Notes under the pieces: generated by a model | The model's input: the letters and a program-made list of their open reading frames with translations, nothing else | What the model was told of the DNA's origin: nothing | Database searches by the model: none | Source of the DNA: Diadema antillarum | Taxonomy: Eukaryota | Assembly: GCF_040938485.1 (NCBI RefSeq) | Contig: NW_027271264.1 | Location: 620,001-684,000 of the forward strand | Length of the DNA: 64,000 nt | Reading direction: 5' to 3' | Made by a program: the position numbers and the translations under genes | Shown here: positions 21,174 through 60,303 of the stretch, in pieces | How positions within the stretch are numbered: the stretch's first letter is position 1 | How the letters are laid out: each line of letters starts with the position of its first letter

Positions 21174-21620
21174 CAGATGGATAGATGGATGGACGGATGA
21201 ATTGGCGGGCATACAGATTGATGAACATACGGATGGATGANNNNNNNNNNNNNNNNNNNNNNNNNNNNNNNNNNNNNNNNNNNNNNNNNNNNNNNNNNNN
21301 NNNNNNNNNNNNNNNNNNNNNNNNNNNNNNNNNNNNNNNNNNNNNNNNNNNNNNNNNNNNNNNNNNNNNNNNNNNNNNNNNNNNNNNNNNNNNNNNNNNN
21401 NNNNNNNNNNNNNNNNNNNNNNNNNNNNNNNNNNNNNNNNNNNNNNNNNNNNNNNNNNNNNNNNNNNNNNNNNNNNNNNNNNNNNNNNNNNNNNNNNNNN
21501 NNNNCTGGCAGAATGAATGACTGAACATCTGGATGACTGTCTGACTGGATTGACTAACCACTTCTGGTCTTTATCCCCGAGGGTTGGGCAAAAATGGATT
21601 GATTGACTGGCTGATTATTC
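21174..21620. repeat. Degenerate (ATGG/GACT)n-like repeat spanning the assembly gap
   Basis: Tetranucleotide-like repeats on both sides of the N run. Confidence 0.7.
21241..21504. other. Assembly gap (264 N)
   Basis: Direct reading. Confidence 1.
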
Positions 21621-44605: not shown

Positions 44606-45262
44606 CGTAGGCGGTCATCCAAACCGTTGTATATCCCAATTTTCCATCAAATTTTCGATTTTGAGATTTCCAGTCATTTCGATAGTGGACATTCCGTTAT
44701 ACATACTGTGAAATTTTTAGTTTCTAATTTTATGTAATTTTTGGTGTAATTATTATTTTTATAGAGCCTTGTCATTTCATTTTGTTCATTTCCCCGATGG
44801 TGCGCGTATTAAAAAACAATGATATGCCGTCCTCTCCTATATACAACGGTTTGGATGACCGCAAACACGGTGCGTGCGGTCACAAACCTTCGTATGTCGC
44901 GCACATTGACTTGGCGCATAATAGAAGTGATATATGAAAGTTCGGTGACCACAAGTACTGTGAGCACGGTCAACAAAACTGTCGTATACATGGTAAATGA
45001 CAACAGTCTTCACAAACCGAAAAAACATGCATGTCGCTCTCTTGCGATTTCTTGCATAATTCCTAACAATACAATTCAACAAAGACATCACATGTTAGAG
45101 TAAGAATTAAAGTCTGACGTGTTACAATAAAAAATAATTGGAAATGCCAGTAATAAAAGAGTGCCATAATGATTGAAAAATGGGTAAACTTCCACGCGAT
45201 TATCTCGAAATGTCATTCTTGCGCGTAAATTGCATATACAACAGTTCTGATAAACGCTGACG
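44606..45262. mobile_element. Short degenerate relative of the 51291-59949 Sola1-like element
   Basis: Left end CGTAGGCGGTCATCCAAACCGTTGTATAT resembles the large element's TIR. The right end reverse-complements to CGTCAGCGTTTATCAGAACTGTTGTATAT. Flanks are ATAC/ATAA; inverted motif pair at ~44839-44900. Confidence 0.7.
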
Positions 45263-50709: not shown

Positions 50710-51557
50710 AAGATTTCACGATCTTAAACTTCTTGATCTTTTGCCAATGTGACCGCGGCTATTGATACAGGTACCTTGGTACATGCATGAACCTGTTAAG
50801 TGGCAGGCTGGCCTGGAATCCACTCACAAAGTGAATGAGTGTCATGCAGGTTCAGGTTTGATTCAAGTGACTAGGGCAATAAAATGCATTAGCTAGAACA
50901 TTCTACAAGCAACAGCATGATTTTGACTGTCCACTGTCATTCATTTGAATAATTCATGTCATTGCAATGACCATCAATATTGCCAATATTAATATCAATA
51001 GTACCACTGTCATTATTATTCTTGATATCATCATTACTATTAAAATTATATTGGTAACTGTTTACCGGTACATCATTATCACTAGATGTTTGTAGTTGTT
51101 TATGTAATAGAAAAAATTTCTATTGATGTAATCATTCTCATGATGGAATACATTTATGGTATGTCATGTATGACAGACATTTAACATGGCAACTGGGGAA
51201 ATATCACTTCTCTCTTTCTATCAAATCCATCACCCCACCCCCTCCTCGCTTACGGCAATACTTCATGAAAAATGGATCTACATGATAAATCGTCGGCGAC
51301 CATCCGAACCGTCGTATCTGTCAGCGGCGTGCGAGAACACGTTTTCGAGAAAAACGCGTTTGAAGTTTGGTGGTCCTTTGAAGTCTAGTGTAAAGAAATT
51401 TCTTGCTTTTATTCCCGATCTTTTTATATGAAAAGAAAGGCAAATTCCAGACGATTCGTATAATATATGTATTTAAAATCATGTATGAATAAAACTAATG
51501 CTACGTTCACAAAAAGAAAGGCCTCCGCACAGGAAGAGTCGAAAAACAGGTATACAA

Positions 51558-51663
51558 CGGTTCGGAGATCGCACTCTCAGTACGCGCGGTCATCCGAACT
51601 GACGTATCGGGGTGATACGTCAGTTTGCTGAACGCGCGTACCGAAAGTGCGATCTCCGAACCG
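51558..51663. repeat. Subterminal ~105-bp palindrome built from TIR-core motifs
   Basis: CGGTTCGGAGATCGCACT...AACTGACGTATC / GATACGTCAGTT...AGTGCGATCTCCGAACCG. Confidence 0.85.
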
Positions 51664-53604
51664 ACGTATCCTATTCTTATAACACGCGCGTCTATGCGAT
51701 ATGCATGGTTACGTGGTATTTATCTGTAAAACGAGTGATTTCGTGCATATTTTTGTGTAAATGCAACTATTCTGTGTCATAATTTCATAAGATGTAGTAC
51801 AAATATGTCCAAGGTCCAGTTTTGTCATGCATGATGAAACACTGGTAGGGGAGGGGGAGATTCCTCTGCAGATTTTTTGTTTGTTTGTTTTGTTTTGTTT
51901 TGTTTTTTGACATGAATTACGCTTCAGGCATCAGACGAGAGTTCCTTTGATGTAAAAAACAAACAAACAGACAGACAAACAAACAATCAAAAAACCCACT
52001 CCATGTTTAGGACACATTATCTTTAATCAGTTTGTATCTAATTTGTATCACGCAAAAAGTGGTTATACATGTATTGTGAAAGAGGTGGGGCCTATGAAAT
52101 TATTGCTTTTTCATTGCAGCCTGCCTCTTCTTTTTCCTCTCATTTCATCTTCTCACTCCTCTCCTCCATGGACCTCTTCTCTTTCCCTTGCAACGCTTTA
52201 ACCCTCTCTCCCACTCTCCAATACTGTAAACAAAAACCAAAATCACACATCCAAGCCTTGCTATTCTTTGTGATAATTCATGCCGCAATCATGACTGCAA
52301 TGACCTAACTTTCATTCTTTCTAAGCTGCCATGATGAATACTGTACATTTTAACCCATGAATAAAGATTTTCTTTTATAGCTTACATGCATGGCAGACAT
52401 AATTCATGATCATTCAGTTGGGTAAAACTCAATTATCAGCTTGCTCATCGGAAATAACATGCAAAAAATTTACTTAGCCACACGTCTGTCTCACATTATT
52501 GTTTTTTTTTTATATAATTATACATGTATATACGTTCAGGACTCTGAAACAGATGCAAATTAATTTTCTACGCAGAAACATCCACACACACAAACATGGA
52601 TTGTACTTGTTCACACAAATAATAAAAGGTGTATTGTCCTACAGACTTAAATGATATTCAAGTAGTACTATGAATATCATTTCACTTCCAATTATATATG
52701 CTGACATTTTAGTGTGCATAATACACTATGATTTCCTCACGATATGAGATCACAGTACATAGAAGAGAAAAACAAAACAAAACAAAGAAAGTGAGTCTTG
52801 AGACAAGGCTGCATTAAAATGCAGCAATATTTATTTCAAAATCAATCCATATCTCACATCCAAAAAGAAAAGAAAAGGAATGAACATGTCCTTAAATACA
52901 ATGGTAAAATTTCATTAAAAATTTCTGAATTTACAGAATGATCAAGATGTCTGTGGTAAAATAGATATTATTCAAATTCATTGATAATGAACATGTCCTT
53001 TAATACAATGGTTACATTTCCTCGAACATTTTTAAATGTACAAATCAAAATGTCTTTGGTTAAATAGATATTGATCTAAATCAATTGTTAAACCGATTTT
53101 AACATGAAAAAATTGTACACAATACAGTTTATATTGAAAAACATTCTGAAACATTCATCAGATGGAAGTAGCTTACAGCAGAAGGCAACTTCCTCCTAAT
53201 ATCAGTGAATCTCTAATAACTCAGGTCTTAGGGCTAAAAAAAAAAAGTACATTGTATGATTTGAGTTGTTATTATGTGCATGTTTGTGATTGTACTTTCA
53301 TTTCGATATAACGGTAATATCTACGCAACGGTCCTACAGAAATCAAATCACATTTGGAAGGAGGAATAAAGCTGTTACATGTACATCTTTCACATGAAAA
53401 AATATGACAATTATTGTTAAAGAAATATCAAAGCTTATTATGATATCATAGAATATTTAATAGCTATAGAATAGACAAATCATAACATGGCGAATTGTGG
53501 TGGGGAGATAGTGCGGAGTGATAAATTATCAAAAATTTGAATACATAGACGAAATTGCTTTTGCATGCACAAACAACTGTAGGCACCATAGGCAAGCAAT
53601 AATT

Positions 53605-53728
53605 AGTGAGAAGTTGGTCAGAGCTGACATTTTGCTGGGATGGAACTGATGGTGCTTCATTGTTCAATTCTGGTACAAAGTGTGTATTGGTATCTCTTGA
53701 ATGCAGTCCATGTCCTTGGTGATGCCCA
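53605..53728 (-). pseudogene. Repeat exon 3f (10-bp insertion, no donor; possibly the terminal exon)
   Basis: Acceptor CATTTCCAG intact; reads VGITKDMDCIQEIPIHTLYQN*. GTGAGT is absent and the sequence runs into AT-rich, UTR-like DNA. Confidence 0.6.
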
Positions 53729-54221
53729 CTGGAAATGAAGAAAACAAAAAGGAAAACAAGATACATATGGTGCATAGATATTACATTTGTTTTATCATAT
53801 TTATCAAAAGACTGAATTTATCATTTCTTTGAAAGGACAAGATGTCATCCAGCTTACAACTCATGGTGGATCCATGCGAGGACATATGGGGTGTAAGATG
53901 CCCTTATTGTTTTTGTTTTTTTGAACAAAATATCAACAGAGAAAACTGGAGGAAGTGCATGTGGTCCCCCCCCCCCCCCCCAGACACACACTTTACAGAA
54001 TTCCTGGACCCACCACTGACAACTGCAAAAAAAAAATAATGGTACATATTAGCCAGGATGCTACATTCTATGCTTGTGTATAGTTGATGTCATTCTTTTT
54101 ATTTGTTATTATATGACAGCAATAGCATCATTTATTCCGGATAATGGTTATTCCAACAAGATTGAGTCAGCAATATCTGGTTGGGTTTCCCGATTAGATT
54201 AAGTGCTTTACAAACACTCAC

Positions 54222-54337
54222 CAGTGAGAAGTTGCAGGTCAGAGATGACATTCTGCGGGATGGATCTGACGGTGCTTCATTGTTCAATACTAGCATTGGT
54301 ATCTCTTGAATGCAGTCCATGTCCTTGGTGATGCCAA
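54222..54337 (-). pseudogene. Repeat exon 3e (116 bp, frameshifted, mosaic of the two subunit types)
   Basis: Splice sites intact; the 5' half is like 3b (TKDMDCI) and the middle like 3a/3c (PMLVLN). Confidence 0.7.
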
Positions 54338-55084
54338 CTGGAAATGAAGAAACAAAAAGAAAAACAAATGCATATGGTGCACAAACATTTTATTTGTTTC
54401 CATCATATTCATTGAAAGATTGACTTTATAATTTCTTTTACTAAGATTAACCTTTTAATAGCACAATTTTCAGGTAGCCCTTTGTAAATGTCCACAAACA
54501 AGAATTTTTTTTTTTGCCCAGCAGAGATCGGACAGATTGGTGATCTGCATCAATGCAAAAGCAGTCAAACGGTACATGCATCCTCATTTGAAAATTGCTC
54601 ATAGATTATCACTCAGCTTGGAAGGTCCAGGTACAAATGGCAGACAAGCTACATTCTCCAGTTGTGTGTTAGCCATTTGCTACAATATGACAAGAAGGAT
54701 AACATGTCATCCAGATTGCAACCAGTGGTTAATTCATGTGGGGCACATCAGGTGTAAGATGCCCTTTATTTTTGTCTTTTTTTTAACAAAAGAAATAAAC
54801 AGAAAAACTGGAGGACGTGCGTGTGGTCCCTCCTCCCCCCCCCCCCCCAACTTTCACAGAATTCCTGGACCCACCCCTGACAACACAAACACTGGTACAT
54901 GGTAGCCAGGATACTACATTCTTTGCTTGTGTGTAGTTTATGTCATCCTTTTTAATTGCTATTAAAGTGTATAAGACAGCAATAGCATCATTTAATCTTA
55001 ATTACTGATGGATATTCCAACAAGATTAATGCAGCAATATCTGGTTGGGTTTCCCAACAAGATTAAGGCTTTACAAACACTCAC

Positions 55085-55176
55085 CAGTTAGAAGTTGGTC
55101 AGAGCTGACATTGCTTCGTTGTTCAATTCTGGTACTGGTATCTCGTGAATGCAGTCCATGTCCTTGGTGATGCCAA
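55085..55176 (-). pseudogene. Repeat exon 3d (92 bp, 22-bp deletion, frameshift to TAA)
   Basis: Splice sites intact; 22 bp shorter than 3b between GAAGCA and ATGTC. Confidence 0.7.
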
Positions 55177-55662
55177 CTGGAAATGGAGAAAACAAAAAGA
55201 AAAAGAAAATACACATGGTGCATAACTATTACATTTTTTTAAAAATCATATTTATTGAAAGATTGACTTTATCATTTCTTTCAAAGGACAAAATGTCATC
55301 CAGATTACAACCCATGGTGGATCCATGCGGGGTCACATAGGGTTTAAGATGCCCCCCCCCCCTTTTTTTAGCAAAAAAATTAACAGAGAAAAACTGGAGG
55401 ACATGCGTGTGGTCCCCCCCCCCCCCTCCCCAATTTGCAGAATTCCTGGACCCACCCCTGAAAACTGCAAAAAATACTGGTACATGGGAGCCAGGATGCT
55501 ACATTCTATGCTTGTGTATAGTTGATGTCATTCTTTTTATTTGCTATTATATGGCAACAATAGCGTAATTTAATCCGGATTACTAAGGGATATTCCAACA
55601 GGATTGATTCAGCAATATCTGGTTGGGTTTCCCAACAAGGTTAAGGCTGTACTAACACTCAC

Positions 55663-55779
55663 CATTGAGAAGTTGGTCAGAGCTGATATTCTGCTGGGGT
55701 GAATCTGACGGTGCTCCTTCATTGTTCAATACTAGCATTGGTATCTCAGGAAGGCAGCTGATGTCTTTTTTTATGCCAA
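55663..55779 (-). CDS. Repeat exon 3c (117 bp, phase 1-1, open)
   Basis: CATTTACAG|...|GTGAGT; VGIKKDISCLPEIPMLVLNNEGAPSDSPQQNISSDQLLN. Confidence 0.7.
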
Positions 55780-56519
55780 CTGTAAATGAGGAAAACAAAA
55801 TATACATAGCCTATGTTTATTTTATTGTTTCTATCAGGTTTTTTTCAAAGATTGAATTTATCTTTTTTATATTAAGATTAACCTTTTAATACCACAATTT
55901 TCAGAAAGCCCTATTTAAATGTCCACAAACAAGAGGGTTTTTTTTGCCCATCAGCAGAGATCGGACAGACTGGTGATCTGCATTAATGCAAAAGTAGTCA
56001 AACGGTACATGCATCCTCATTTGAGAATTGCTCATATAAATTATCACTCTGCTTGGAAGGTCCAGATACAATTTGCAGACAAGCTACATTCTCCAGTTGT
56101 GTGTTAGCCATTTGCTACAATATGACAAGAAGGATAACATGTCATCCAGATTGCAACCAGTGGTTGATTCATGTGGGGCACATCAGGTGTAAGATACCCT
56201 TTATTTTTGTCTTTGTTTTAAACAAAAGAAATGAACAGAAAAACTGGACGACATGCATGTGGTCCCCCCCCCCCCCCCAACTTCACAGAATTCCTGGACC
56301 CACCCCTGACAACTGCAAAAAACACTGGCACATCGTAGCCAGGATACTACATTCTTTGCTTGTGTGTAGTTTATGTCATCCTTTTTAATTGCTATTAAAG
56401 TGTATAAGACAGCAATAGCATCATTTAATCTTAATCACTATTATGGATATTCCAACAAGATTAATGCAGCAATATCTGGTTGGGTTTCCCAACAAGATTA
56501 AGGCTTTACAAACACTCAC

Positions 56520-56633
56520 CAGTTAGAAGTTGGTCATAGCTGACATTTTGCTGGGATGGATCTCCTGGTGCTTCGTTGTTCAATTCTGGTATTGGTATCT
56601 CGTGAATGCAGTCCATGTCCTTGGTGATGCCAA
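56520..56633 (-). CDS. Repeat exon 3b (114 bp, phase 1-1, open)
   Basis: CATTTCCAG|...|GTGAGT; VGITKDMDCIHEIPIPELNNEAPGDPSQQNVSYDQLLT. Confidence 0.7.
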
Positions 56634-57106
56634 CTGGAAATGAAGAAAACACAAAGAAAAAGAAAATACACATGGTGCATAAATATTGCATTTTTAAAAA
56701 AATCATATTTATTGAAAGATTGGCTTAATCATTTCTTTGTCATCCAGATTACAACCCATGGTGGATCCGCGCAGGGACACATGGGGTTTAAGATGCCCTT
56801 TTTTTAAACAAAAAATAAACAGAGAAAAACTGGAGGATGTGCATATGTTCCCCCCCCCCCCCCCCCACCAATTTACAGAATTCCTTGACCCATCCCTGAC
56901 AACTGCAAAAAATACTGGTACATGGTAGCCAGGATGCTACAGTCTTTGCTTGTGTATAGTTGATGTCATTCTTTTTATTTGCTATTATATAACAGCAATA
57001 GCATAATTTAATCCGGATTACTAATTGATATTCCAACAAGATTGATTCAACCATATCTGCTTGGGTTTCTGAACAAGATTACTAGTAAGGCTTTACAAAC
57101 ACTCAC

Positions 57107-57223
57107 CATTGAGAAGTTGGTCAGAGCTGACATTCTGCTGGGATGGATCTAACGGTTCTCCTTCACTGTTCAATACTAGCATTGGTATCTCTAGAATGCA
57201 GCTGATGTCCTTTTTGATGCCAA
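57107..57223 (-). CDS. Repeat exon 3a (117 bp, phase 1-1, open)
   Basis: CATTTACAG|...|GTGAGT; VGIKKDISCILEIPMLVLNSEGEPLDPSQQNVSSDQLLN. Confidence 0.7.
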
Positions 57224-58053
57224 CTGTAAATGAGGAAAACAAAATATACATAGTGCATACATTTTACACTGTTACTATCCTATTTTTTTTTTAAGATGAT
57301 TTTTTTTTAAAATTAAGATTAACCTTTTAATACCACATTTTCAGATAGCCCTATGTAAATGTCCACAAACAAGAGTTTTAATTTTGCCCATCAGCAGAGA
57401 TCTGACAGACTGTGGTGATCTGCATTAGATGCAAAAGCAGTCAAGCGGTACATGCATCCTCTTTCCACAGTCAATTGCATGTGCTTATGAAGAATACAAA
57501 AACATTGGAAGTGAGGCACAAAAATATCATTTGCTGATAGGCTTACAAACTCTTTTGTTACGTATAGGGCACCCGAATGGGGTCAGTAAGCCAAAATTCT
57601 TTAAACTCAGCCTTGCTGGCTACACACATAGATTTTCAGTTTTGCAGCAAAACAAGGCATTATGAAATTGGAAAAAGTAACTAACACAAAATACAAGCAG
57701 ATGTGACACAGAAAAAGAAAAGAAACTGATAGAAGGTCTAATCTGTTCATTAAAGTTTTTTTTTTTTTGTAGGCATAACACAAATAAACATGAATTAAGG
57801 CTACACAAGTACACGCTCATGTCTTTATTGTGAAAACTTGGTATACCAGGTTGTGCTGTCTATGAGTTGACACCATGGAAACCTTATATACCAGGCACTA
57901 CTTCATTGCATTCATACAGTATGGAGTAAGCTACTTCTAACATTGCAGCACAGTTATGAAGTTATTAGAGGCATTGAATAAACACACACACACTATACAC
58001 TGTCCATACTTTTTACTACAAGTATGTATTCGTTTGTGTGCGCACAATCTTAC

Positions 58054-58350
58054 CTAATTTCGCCAGGTAAATGCTGTCATCATCGTCATAATCAGAAGTA
58101 TTATCTTCGTCACTGCTGTCTGCGGTGCTTGTGTTTCCATCATCGCTACTGCTTTCAGAATTCTTTCCCCCATACACAGCAGTAACTGTGCCTTTCCACA
58201 GTTTCCTGTGCCATCGCATTGACACACGAACTCCAAGTCGTGGGAAGCATGCCCTTCCTGAATTTCAGCTGATCATCAGCTACGGTATTCCTTGTACCAT
58301 CTTTGTCCCAAAGGACTTCAACATCTGTTGGTTTCCCTGAGGACAAAGAG
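58054..58350 (-). pseudogene. Exon 2: Trp-containing module plus acidic linker, with one +1 frameshift near 58235
   Basis: Acceptor TTTTTGTTTGTTACAG|, donor TTAG|GTAAGA. The exon is 297 bp, one base over a phase-2 to phase-1 exon. Removing one T gives SLSSGKPTDVEVLWDKDGTRNTVADDQLKFRKGMLPTTGVRVSMRWHRKLWKGTVTAVYGGKNSESSSDDGNTSTADSSDEDNTSDYDDDDSIYLAKL. Confidence 0.75.
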
Positions 58351-59614
58351 CTGTAACAAACAAAAACAAAAACATTCACTACAAGTGTACTAAAAATATA
58401 TTTTTTAATTTTAGCAGAAATGTTTTACCTCAAGCCTATCTAGTGGTCTATTTTTACATTGATCATAAAAATGCAAAAGCACAATTCAACTCATATTATA
58501 AACGGATAGAGGGCGAAGATCCCCTGTGCTTATGGTACTGCAAAACTACTCTCTAGAATGTGTGGGCACCTATAGCCTAGCTAGGCTAGATCTGACAATT
58601 GGAACATTGCATTAAGACCTCAATTTATATATCTTAATTGTAGAACATCAACATATTACTATTAGATATCACAGGAGGGGCTTACTCAAGTACTGCCCTC
58701 TGGCCTGTTAACACACTAAAGCCTTCATTGCAGTGATTTCAATATTATGGAGACTTGGCACTCACAGCGACATAAAAATGCATGCGATAAAAATTCATAC
58801 TCAGTACCGTGTGCGGTACCGTACAAAGCATTTGCAGTTGGCTAGATCTCTGAACAACACACATGTATTTATGGGCCAGCATAATCTAATCCTACTCCTA
58901 GAGTCCTAGGAATCCTAGTATCAGATGAATTTACAGATGTTGGTAATTTATAATCGTTCATTTTACTATAGCCAGTATAGCCTATACTAGGCCCTTCTAC
59001 TACTAGATCCTTGGCTTACATTGGCAAATTCACATGAGATACATTACACTCAGATTTGGGTGTTTTTCTTTGTGTGTGTTTGAAAGCTTGGGGCTCAATC
59101 GGCCATAAAAACATTATAAGTAAGTAGAACCTATCATCAGAACTCTAGGGTCCTACACTCAATGATGAACCAGCGATTAGCGGCTCTAAATTGTTGGCTG
59201 TGACTACGACTCTACGTAGTTAGACTCGTCTAGTAATCTCGTACTTTTTGTGGTAATTCCCAAACAACTCACCCAGAAGTGTTAACAGTTTGGCATTGCC
59301 CACACCCACTACGTATGAGGTCCGTATATGGACCATAAGCACATAAAGCCAACTCAATGAGATCATTGTGAACGTTGTTTTCTTCTAGATTAGTAAGGGT
59401 CTATGATTTTAAACCCTACTAGAGTATCCCTTTGTACCCACATATTTATCTATACACAGGACTACACCTAACAACACGACGAAATATTTGGGGAAACCCA
59501 CGACAATCTGCGTATTTATCTTGACAAGTGACAATCTTATGGATAGAACTTGCTTGGGTCTGTTCATTTTAATTGAAATCGCATGATTTCATAGCTACTC
59601 ATAATAAAACTCAC

Positions 59615-59646
59615 CGGTCCTGGGGAGGGTCCAGTTGACGCTCCAT
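59615..59646 (-). CDS. Exon 1 of the transposon-borne gene (MERQLDPPQD-R)
   Basis: ACG-ATG-G start context; ends CG|GTGAGT (phase 2), which matches the phase of the exon 2 acceptor. Confidence 0.65.
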
Positions 59647-60303
59647 CGTCTGCTTCTGCCAGTTCTGGCTGATCCGGGGCGATACGACACCTTCACTGAA
59701 CGCGACTCGAAGTTTCGCGTCCACCCGAACCGACGTATAGCGATACGTCGGTTCGGATGAACGCCTTCAGCCAATTCGCGTTCAGGCAAAATGACGTATA
59801 TCAAATTTCTCTGTTAAAAACACAAAATCCGGTTCCAAAATTTTGTGAGTAGAAAGAGTGTGTGCTGGGCTTTCTTAAAACGGCAAAATTTGAAATTCGA
59901 AAAATTTACCGAATTTTGACATATACGACGGTTCGGATGGTCGTCGACGAAATAGCACAGGAACATCATGTTAGTGGGACATCGATTGTTATGTACCATC
60001 AGTTTACATTGCTCTAGTTGCACATGCAATTAACTGCTGTTCTTCTATACATCAGAACAACTTCTTCTTCTTCTTCTTCTTTTTTTTTGACCAACACTTT
60101 GGATCTGTGAATAAGGAGACATGAACATGAAATAAGAATATGAGGAAGGACATGTTAAAATTGGGATAAAATAAGAATAAAAGAAGGGCATTCACATTCA
60201 AGAAATGGCTACTGTGACAATGATAACATGACACCAGGTGTACAGTTGGGTGGGGGAGGGGGGAGGGGTGTGGGGGGGGGGGGGGGAGAGACCAATAAAA
60301 GCT

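What the first reader, a model, noticed from the sequence alone, without database searches (positions are those of the whole stretch)
53605..57461. Hidden tandem array of symmetric phase-1 exons inside an apparent satellite
What looks like a 1.45-kb higher-order repeat is six exon+intron duplications. Each has a pyrimidine-tract/CAG acceptor and five have GTGAGT donors. The 114/117-bp exons encode a 38-39-aa repeat (VGI.KD..CI.EIP...LNNE.P.DPSQQNVSSDQLL). Two types alternate, so a two-exon unit was itself triplicated. Symmetric phase-1 exons can be included or skipped without changing frame, which would allow length-variable isoforms (inference).
Basis: partly seen in the sequence, partly recalled or inferred. 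Interest (0 to 1): 0.8.

Follow-up and report, generated by a model that had tools for sequence, protein, structure and literature searches.

The report
Exon-like repeat array inside a transposon
The six "hidden exons" are real, splice-site-bearing repeats, but they lie inside an 8.7-kb jumping gene present in dozens of copies in the sea urchin Diadema antillarum; half are frame-broken and none shows clear protein-level conservation, so this is not a host gene with a tunable repeat domain.

Summary
The repeat is real. Six minus-strand exon-like units (window 53604-57223) alternate in two types. All six have pyrimidine-tract/CAG acceptors and five have GTGAGT donors. Only three are in frame (117, 114 and 117 bp). 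The other three are 92, 116 and 125 bp, with frameshifts or stops, and the last has no donor.

The array is not at a single locus. It lies inside an 8,659-bp element (51291-59949) with 27-bp inverted ends, a 4-bp AAAT target duplication and about 47 end pairs in the genome. Copies are 89-99% identical and every copy read has the same array where covered. I read it as a non-autonomous, Sola1-like DNA transposon. The scan had already noted this element at these same window coordinates (s1-224538).

Substitution rates in the exons match those in the introns, and pN/pS is 0.3-0.8 (not significant). The repeat has no protein relatives outside Diadema.

NCBI RefSeq models in D. antillarum and D. setosum do join these exons at exactly the predicted junctions. 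Those models use varying exon sets and reading frames, and one splices into an exon 7.5 kb outside the element. No RNA reads could be obtained.

Verdict: these are splice-competent, decaying exon copies carried by a transposon. The idea of length-variable isoforms of a host gene is not supported.

The parts
51291..59949 (-). Whole 8,659-bp non-autonomous DNA transposon (Sola1-like); the carried gene runs on the minus strand
   Evidence: Similarity to 20 other genomic copies starts and stops sharply at these positions, and the flanks are unrelated
51291..51317 (+). Left terminal inverted repeat, 27 bp (CGTCGGCGACCATCCGAACCGTCGTAT)
   Evidence: 94 genomic matches versus 0 for the reversed control pattern
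59923..59949 (-). Right terminal inverted repeat, 27 bp, one mismatch to the left one
51287..51290 (.). Target-site duplication AAAT; its partner is at 59950-59953
   Evidence: Flanks of 16 other copies are mostly A-W-W-T
51552..51669 (.). Three subterminal copies of the end motif TCCGAACCGWCGTAT; two more lie at 59724-59757
   Evidence: 9 matches in the window versus 0.04 expected by chance
59615..59646 (-). Exon 1 coding part (ATG, 10 codons, phase-2 GTGAGT donor)
   Evidence: Used in RefSeq models P0002 and P0005
58054..58350 (-). Exon 2 (Trp-rich part plus acidic Ser/Asp linker). In this copy the frame entered from exon 1 stops, and the frame that leads into the array opens only from an internal Met
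   Evidence: P0003 starts at that Met
57107..57223 (-). Unit 3a, type B, 117 bp, open, phase 1-1
56520..56633 (-). Unit 3b, type A, 114 bp, open, phase 1-1 (113 bp and frameshifted in older copies C152 and C321)
55663..55779 (-). Unit 3c, type B, 117 bp, open, phase 1-1
55085..55176 (-). Unit 3d, type A, 92 bp (22-bp deletion), shifts the frame; 114 bp and open in older copies C18 and C6
54222..54337 (-). Unit 3e, A/B hybrid, 116 bp, frameshifted. An alternative GTAAAG donor lies 10 nt downstream (54206-54211)
   Evidence: A junction 10 nt past the canonical donor is inferred from the peptide of P0002, which comes from an older-subfamily copy
53604..53728 (-). Unit 3f, type A, 125 bp (11-bp insertion), in-frame stop, no GT donor
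56104..56114 (-). Extra acceptor inside the long intron, followed by a stop after three codons. It fits the C-terminal three residues of model P0003. A twin lies at 54669-54679
   Evidence: site use is inferred from the peptide

Best explanation
The array is an internal tandem duplication of an exon+intron module carried by a young, multi-copy, non-autonomous cut-and-paste DNA transposon. The element has 27-bp inverted ends, repeated subterminal motifs and a 4-bp AWWT target duplication, which is the Sola1 type. The genome is Diadema antillarum. The duplications happened before the family spread: a module of about 590 bp duplicated and diverged into types A and B, and then the A-B pair was triplicated. 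The three downstream copies have since decayed. Each module keeps a good acceptor and, in five of six, a consensus donor. Transcripts that start near the 5' end of the element can therefore be spliced through the array in several patterns, and can splice onward into host exons downstream of an insertion. Shown here: the element, its copy number, the array anatomy and the lack of clear coding constraint. Inferred: mobilisation in trans by a Sola1 transposase encoded elsewhere, actual splicing in vivo (supported only by RefSeq models), and the absence of a functional protein product.
For: A 1.56-kb piece of the array matches more than 30 other loci at 89-99% identity, each with the same shifted self-matches. 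Element ends are sharp at 51291 and 59949, and 16 other copies have flanks unrelated to each other. There are 48 forward and 46 reverse matches to the terminal repeat and none to the control; most pairs are 8.5-8.8 kb apart. The target duplication is AAAT and other flanks are mostly AWWT, which PMC3845634 calls a hallmark of Sola1. The defects in 3e and 3f are shared by all copies examined. The 3d deletion is shared by the whole young subfamily and absent from older copies. Within the array, exon identity (0.91, 0.98) is no higher than the identity of the adjoining introns (0.86-0.955). Between types A and B, the 150 nt downstream of the exon are more alike (0.87) than the exons themselves (0.79-0.84). 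Across 21 copies, distinct substitution variants are 0.094 per site in the open exons and 0.084 in the introns (p=0.5). pN/pS is 0.33-0.77 between paralogous exons and 0.53 among copies; none is significant. A profile of the repeat searched against 1.84 billion proteins found only Diadema RefSeq models. Those models use the predicted junctions but different exon sets and frames. One model (P0001, contig C1402) joins 3d to an exon 7.5 kb beyond the end of the element.
Against: There is a mild, consistent hint of constraint on 3a-3c. Distinct indel variants number 1 in 320 sites versus 47 in 2,352 intron sites (p=0.025). Every pN/pS estimate is below 1, and none of the 33 variants is a nonsense change. 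Exon 2 is fully open in one subfamily (C40, C1048, C70). No transposase was found, so assignment to Sola1 rests only on the target-site pattern. Splicing rests on gene models whose RNA support I could not inspect.
Confidence: 0.6

Rival explanations
1. The transposon carries a working ORFan gene. Its protein would start at the internal Met of exon 2 (or at exon 1 in the subfamily where exon 2 is fully open). It would contain an acidic linker plus three or four 38-aa repeats. Exon duplication would be how this accessory protein grows.
For: 3a-3c are open in nearly all copies, with a marginal deficit of indels. pN/pS is below 1. Exon 2 is open in C40, C1048 and C70. RefSeq models P0003 and P0010 have this architecture in two species.
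Against: The constraint signals are weak or not significant. Subfamilies differ in which frame of exon 2 is open. The young subfamily spread after losing the frame in 3d. The Atlas model has pLDDT 0.43, and there is no Pfam or PDB match. There are no relatives outside the genus.
Confidence: 0.15
2. The units are never spliced in vivo. On this view the RefSeq models are prediction artefacts on repeat DNA, and the array is only an internal tandem repeat that happens to keep splice-like motifs.
For: No RNA run was found, and the three runs laid are genomic-looking contigs with no exon-exon joints. Public protein collections hold no transcript-derived ORFs, only NCBI models.
Against: Only a few of the roughly 47 near-identical copies carry models, and those models differ in structure. 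That pattern is more like patchy transcript evidence than uniform ab initio calls. The assembly preprint says RNA-seq was integrated by the NCBI annotation pipeline. Acceptors and donors match the consensus in all units but 3f.
Confidence: 0.2
3. One reading: a host gene with a tandem array of symmetric phase-1 coding exons that gives length-variable isoforms.
For: Splice motifs are present, three units are in frame, and models exist that skip units.
Against: The array is in a dispersed element with terminal repeats and a target duplication. Half the units are out of frame. Exons show no excess conservation over introns.
Confidence: 0.03

Closest known systems
Non-autonomous Sola1 DNA transposons (Bao et al. 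2009, as cited in PMC3845634)
   Same: Terminal inverted repeats, a 4-bp AWWT target duplication, many near-identical copies, and no transposase of its own
   Different: At 8.7 kb it is far larger than the Sola1 MITEs described in that paper (0.2-0.7 kb). It carries a promoter-proximal multi-exon ORFan with an internal exon-intron array. No Sola1 transposase was linked to it here
Exonised transposable elements and TE-host chimeric transcripts
   Same: Splice sites inside the element are used in gene models, and one model runs from element exons into a flanking exon
   Different: The usual case is single cryptic exons. Here a ready-made array of up to six donor/acceptor modules travels with the element
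Tandem exon duplication in host genes (cassette or mutually exclusive exon arrays)
   Same: Exon+intron modules were duplicated in tandem, they enter in phase 1, and three units preserve the frame
   Different: This is not a host locus. Half the units are frame-broken, exons are not conserved above introns, and there is no conserved reading frame
Higher-order-repeat satellites
   Same: Two-unit 1.45-kb period with alternating subunit types
   Different: Only about 2.7 periods are present, embedded in a mobile element and repeated genome-wide as part of it

Membership tests
Tandem symmetric coding exons of a host gene | All unit lengths are multiples of three, with matching entry and exit phase | tested here: not met
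   Lengths are 117, 114, 117, 92, 116 and 125 bp
Tandem symmetric coding exons of a host gene | Exons are better conserved than the flanking introns | tested here: not met
Tandem symmetric coding exons of a host gene | A single genomic locus outside mobile DNA | tested here: not met
   About 47 terminal-repeat pairs; 17 insertions with distinct flanks were seen directly
Tandem symmetric coding exons of a host gene | Spliced transcripts across the junctions | tested here: inconclusive
   RefSeq models use the junctions, but no RNA reads were available
Sola1 superfamily DNA transposon | Terminal inverted repeats and discrete ends shared between copies | tested here: met
Sola1 superfamily DNA transposon | 4-bp target-site duplication with AWWT preference | tested here: met
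   AAAT on both sides of the window copy. 15 of the 17 flanks of the 16 other copies plus the window's right flank start with A, and 14 of 17 end with T. The criterion is taken from PMC3845634
Sola1 superfamily DNA transposon | A Sola1-type DDE transposase, in the element or in an autonomous partner with the same ends | not tested
   No transposase-sized ORF is in the element.
Gene-fragment-capturing transposon (Pack-MULE-like transduplication) | A parent host gene elsewhere in the genome with the same exons | tested here: inconclusive
   Nearly all six-frame hits to exon 2 and to the repeat fall on contigs that also hold a family end match or a listed partial copy. Two weak hits (C157, C758) were not inspected

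The most novel reading that the evidence does not exclude
The element acts as a mobile 5' exon cassette. Its promoter-proximal exon 1 and the string of strong donors in the array would capture downstream host exons wherever it lands in the right orientation. That would generate TE-host fusion transcripts at many loci, as in the model on contig C1402. The duplicated modules would be retained because extra donors and acceptors make such capture, or the element's own transcript processing, more robust.
Probability: 0.12. Interest if true: 0.55.

Novelty: new member of a known kind. Interest (0 to 1): 0.3.

Why it matters
It corrects an attractive but wrong reading: what looked like a private, tunable repeat domain of a host gene is cargo of a recently active transposon. 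It also documents a large non-autonomous Sola1-like family in Diadema. The family's splice-competent internal repeats already produce inconsistent "uncharacterized protein" models in two RefSeq annotations, including at least one TE-host chimera, so the finding is useful for repeat curation and for filtering gene sets. It offers a small natural example of exon-intron modules that duplicate and decay without clear coding constraint.

Tried and rejected
RNA evidence. The one run search returned three runs of unknown kind. When laid on the window, their contigs cover introns and exons alike. The only joints reflect the 1.45-kb repeat period, so the runs look genomic and say nothing about splicing.

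Fetching more of the genome. I did not try to get round this.

Family and fold searches. Pfam, PDB sequence search and the ESM Atlas gave nothing credible for exon 2 or for the repeat.

Weak profile hits. P0007-P0009 are unrelated repetitive proteins.

Separate dispersed repeat in the introns. I considered whether the poly-C/GAATTCCTGGACCC intron segment is an independent repeat. All scored genomic matches lay inside this same family.

Surroundings. Rfam and Pfam scans of the rest of the window found nothing.

Joined exon model. I did not build or send any joined exon model of my own. Exons were searched one by one by reference, and the only spliced sequences used were database proteins, referred to by id.
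Full report
**The observation**

Reading window 53000-58200 shows that the signal is on the minus strand. Direct-repeat analysis finds families with alternating start-to-start spacings of about 580-610 and 840-865 bp. That gives a two-unit period of about 1.45 kb over 53605-57464.

Six exon-like units can be delimited:
- 3a: 57107-57223, 117 bp
- 3b: 56520-56633, 114 bp
- 3c: 55663-55779, 117 bp
- 3d: 55085-55176, 92 bp
- 3e: 54222-54337, 116 bp
- 3f: 53604-53728, 125 bp

All six follow a pyrimidine tract ending in CAG. Units 3a-3e are followed by GTGAGT; 3f is followed by ATTATT.

The other three do not. 3d has a 22-bp deletion. 3e has a 1-bp deletion plus a 3-bp insertion. 3f has an 11-bp insertion and an in-frame stop.

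Types alternate. 3a and 3c are 91% identical. 3b, 3d and 3f are 92-98% identical. 3e sits in a type-B slot but has a type-A acceptor and 5' half.

**The array belongs to a dispersed element**

A 1,561-bp piece covering 3a-3c matches more than 30 other places in the window's own 1.75-Gb assembly at 89-99% identity. Each place shows the same pattern of shifted self-matches.

I compared the window with 10-kb stretches from 20 of these places. Similarity starts sharply at 51286-51291 and ends at 59950-59957. The flanks are unrelated, both to the window and to each other: 16 other copies plus the window give 17 distinct insertions.

The ends are 27-bp inverted repeats with one mismatch. The window copy is flanked by AAAT on both sides. 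The other flanks are mostly A-W-W-T.

The terminal pattern occurs 48 times forward and 46 times reverse in the genome, against none for the reversed control. Most pairs are 8.5-8.8 kb apart. Copies of the inner end motif recur subterminally at both ends.

No transposase-sized reading frame exists in the element. A 4-bp AWWT target duplication is described as a hallmark of Sola1 transposons in PMC3845634, citing Bao et al. 2009. I therefore call the element a non-autonomous, Sola1-like DNA transposon. Superfamily membership remains open because no transposase was linked to it.

**The organism and the copy count**

Proteins that match the repeat are named by NCBI as Diadema antillarum and D. setosum. 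Their contig lengths equal those of contigs in this assembly, for example C1402 and C10.

The assembly size matches approximately (1.75 versus 1.73 Gb) and the contig number nearly (2,963 versus 2,964) with the preprint 10.64898/2026.05.24.727502. That preprint reports 84% duplicated BUSCOs, so copy counts may be inflated by retained haplotypes.

**The carried gene**

On the minus strand there is an ATG about 300 bp inside the right end. It is followed by 10 codons and a phase-2 GTGAGT donor (exon 1, 59615-59646). Exon 2 follows at 58054-58350, and then the array.

In the window and in most young copies, the frame entered from exon 1 stops inside exon 2. The frame that leads into the array in phase 1 opens only from an internal Met. 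Other subfamilies carry different indels, and one subfamily (C40, C1048, C70) has exon 2 open throughout.

The defects in 3e and 3f are shared by every copy examined. The 22-bp deletion in 3d is shared by the whole young subfamily (12 copies read) but absent from older copies C18 and C6, where 3d is 114 bp and open. 3b is frameshifted (113 bp) in older copies C152 and C321. The family therefore kept transposing after individual units lost their frame.

**Tests for coding constraint**

*Within the array.* Between the first two periods, exon identity is 0.91 (type B) and 0.98 (type A). The adjoining introns are 0.86-0.955 identical. Between the two types, the 150 nt downstream of the exon are more alike (0.87) than the exons (0.79-0.84).

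*Between paralogous exons.* pN/pS is 0.71 (3a/3c), 0.33 (3b/old 3d) and 0.57-0.77 (across types), from 9-24 differences each.

*Among 21 copies*, after masking homopolymers:
- Distinct substitution variants are 0.094 per site in 3a-3c and 0.084 in the array introns (p=0.5).
- Distinct indel variants are 1 in 320 sites versus 47 in 2,352 (p=0.025).
- Eleven synonymous and 22 non-synonymous variants give a ratio of 0.53 (p=0.09).

There is no clear purifying selection, only a weak and consistent lean towards it.

**Relatives and transcripts**

A profile of the repeat searched against 1.84 billion representative proteins returned six real hits, all from Diadema. Three further hits are unrelated repetitive proteins. 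A word search added two more Diadema models and nothing from transcript-derived sources.

All of these are NCBI "uncharacterized protein" models. Their peptides cross from one unit to the next exactly at the predicted junctions (the split codon reads Val), but their structures differ:

| Model | Species | Exon path |
|---|---|---|
| P0003 | D. antillarum | exon 2 (internal Met), 3a, 3b, then a three-codon terminal exon that fits an acceptor inside the long intron at 56114 |
| P0011 (on C10) | D. antillarum | 3a, 3b, 3d, 3e; skips 3c |
| P0002 | D. antillarum | exon 1 directly to an older 3b in another frame, then 3c, 3d, 3e, 3f; its peptide fits a GTAAAG donor 10 nt past the usual one after 3e |
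| P0001 (on C1402) | D. antillarum | 3a, 3b, 3c, 3d, then an exon at C1402:323014 |
| P0010, P0012 | D. setosum | resemble the older subfamily |

The P0001 exon at C1402:323014 lies 7.5 kb beyond the end of the element and begins after a proper AG. That model is a TE-host chimera.

The splice sites are thus treated as real by a pipeline that integrates RNA-seq. I could not see the evidence behind these particular models.

The only sequencing runs found look genomic and show no exon-exon joints. Exons were sent singly by reference.

**What it is and how it works**

The best reading is an exon+intron module that was duplicated in tandem inside a transposon before the family expanded. Divergence between periods is 5-14%, while copies in the main colinear alignments differ by at most about 7%. 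The array has since decayed from its 3' side.

Because five modules keep consensus sites, transcripts from the 5' end of the element can be spliced in many ways, and can splice into neighbouring host exons.

Mobilisation must depend on a transposase made elsewhere. I did not test whether it shares these ends.

A functional ORFan protein from the few intact copies cannot be excluded, but it has little support.

**Verdict**

The feature is real. It has been reclassified from "hidden exons of a host gene" to [quoted passage not shown]. It is of modest interest, mainly for annotation hygiene and as an example of TE-borne exon modules.

The assembly gap at 21241-21504 was left untouched.

Noticed in passing
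window 44606-44866: A roughly 260-bp MITE-like element. Its inverted ends (core GCGGTCATCCAAACCGTTGTATAT) resemble the 27-bp ends of the 8.7-kb element, so it is probably a small relative of the same end family.
   Followed up: partly
G000 C1116:1171153-1188299, C380:478774-496152, C2:6500291-6509533, C58:4835443-4844106: End pairs that are either longer than usual (17.1 and 17.4 kb) or have the same end variant on both sides. C58 and C1116 seem to have exon 2 open across the break seen in the window. They could hold nested insertions or an autonomous version.
   Followed up: no
G000 C157:403465-403572 and C758:168332-168439: Weak matches (69% identity) to the 38-aa repeat, inside 108-109-aa open frames. 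These contigs have no match to the terminal repeat. They could be fragments, a retrocopy or a source gene.
   Followed up: no
L034 (C1402:323014-323196) and L033 (C1243:1750216-1750398): The flanking exon joined to unit 3d in model P0001 occurs at two loci that both match the query at 97% identity. These may be the two haplotypes of one place in this redundant assembly.
   Followed up: partly
window 52879-53072: A 107-bp tandem repeat (1.8 copies, 81% match) in the 3' non-coding part of the element.
   Followed up: no
window 58249 and 58296: The dominant contigs of three public runs differ from the window in exon 2 by one base left out and one put in. This shows that another subfamily with a different exon 2 frame is the more abundant form in those samples.
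   Followed up: partly
   Followed up: no
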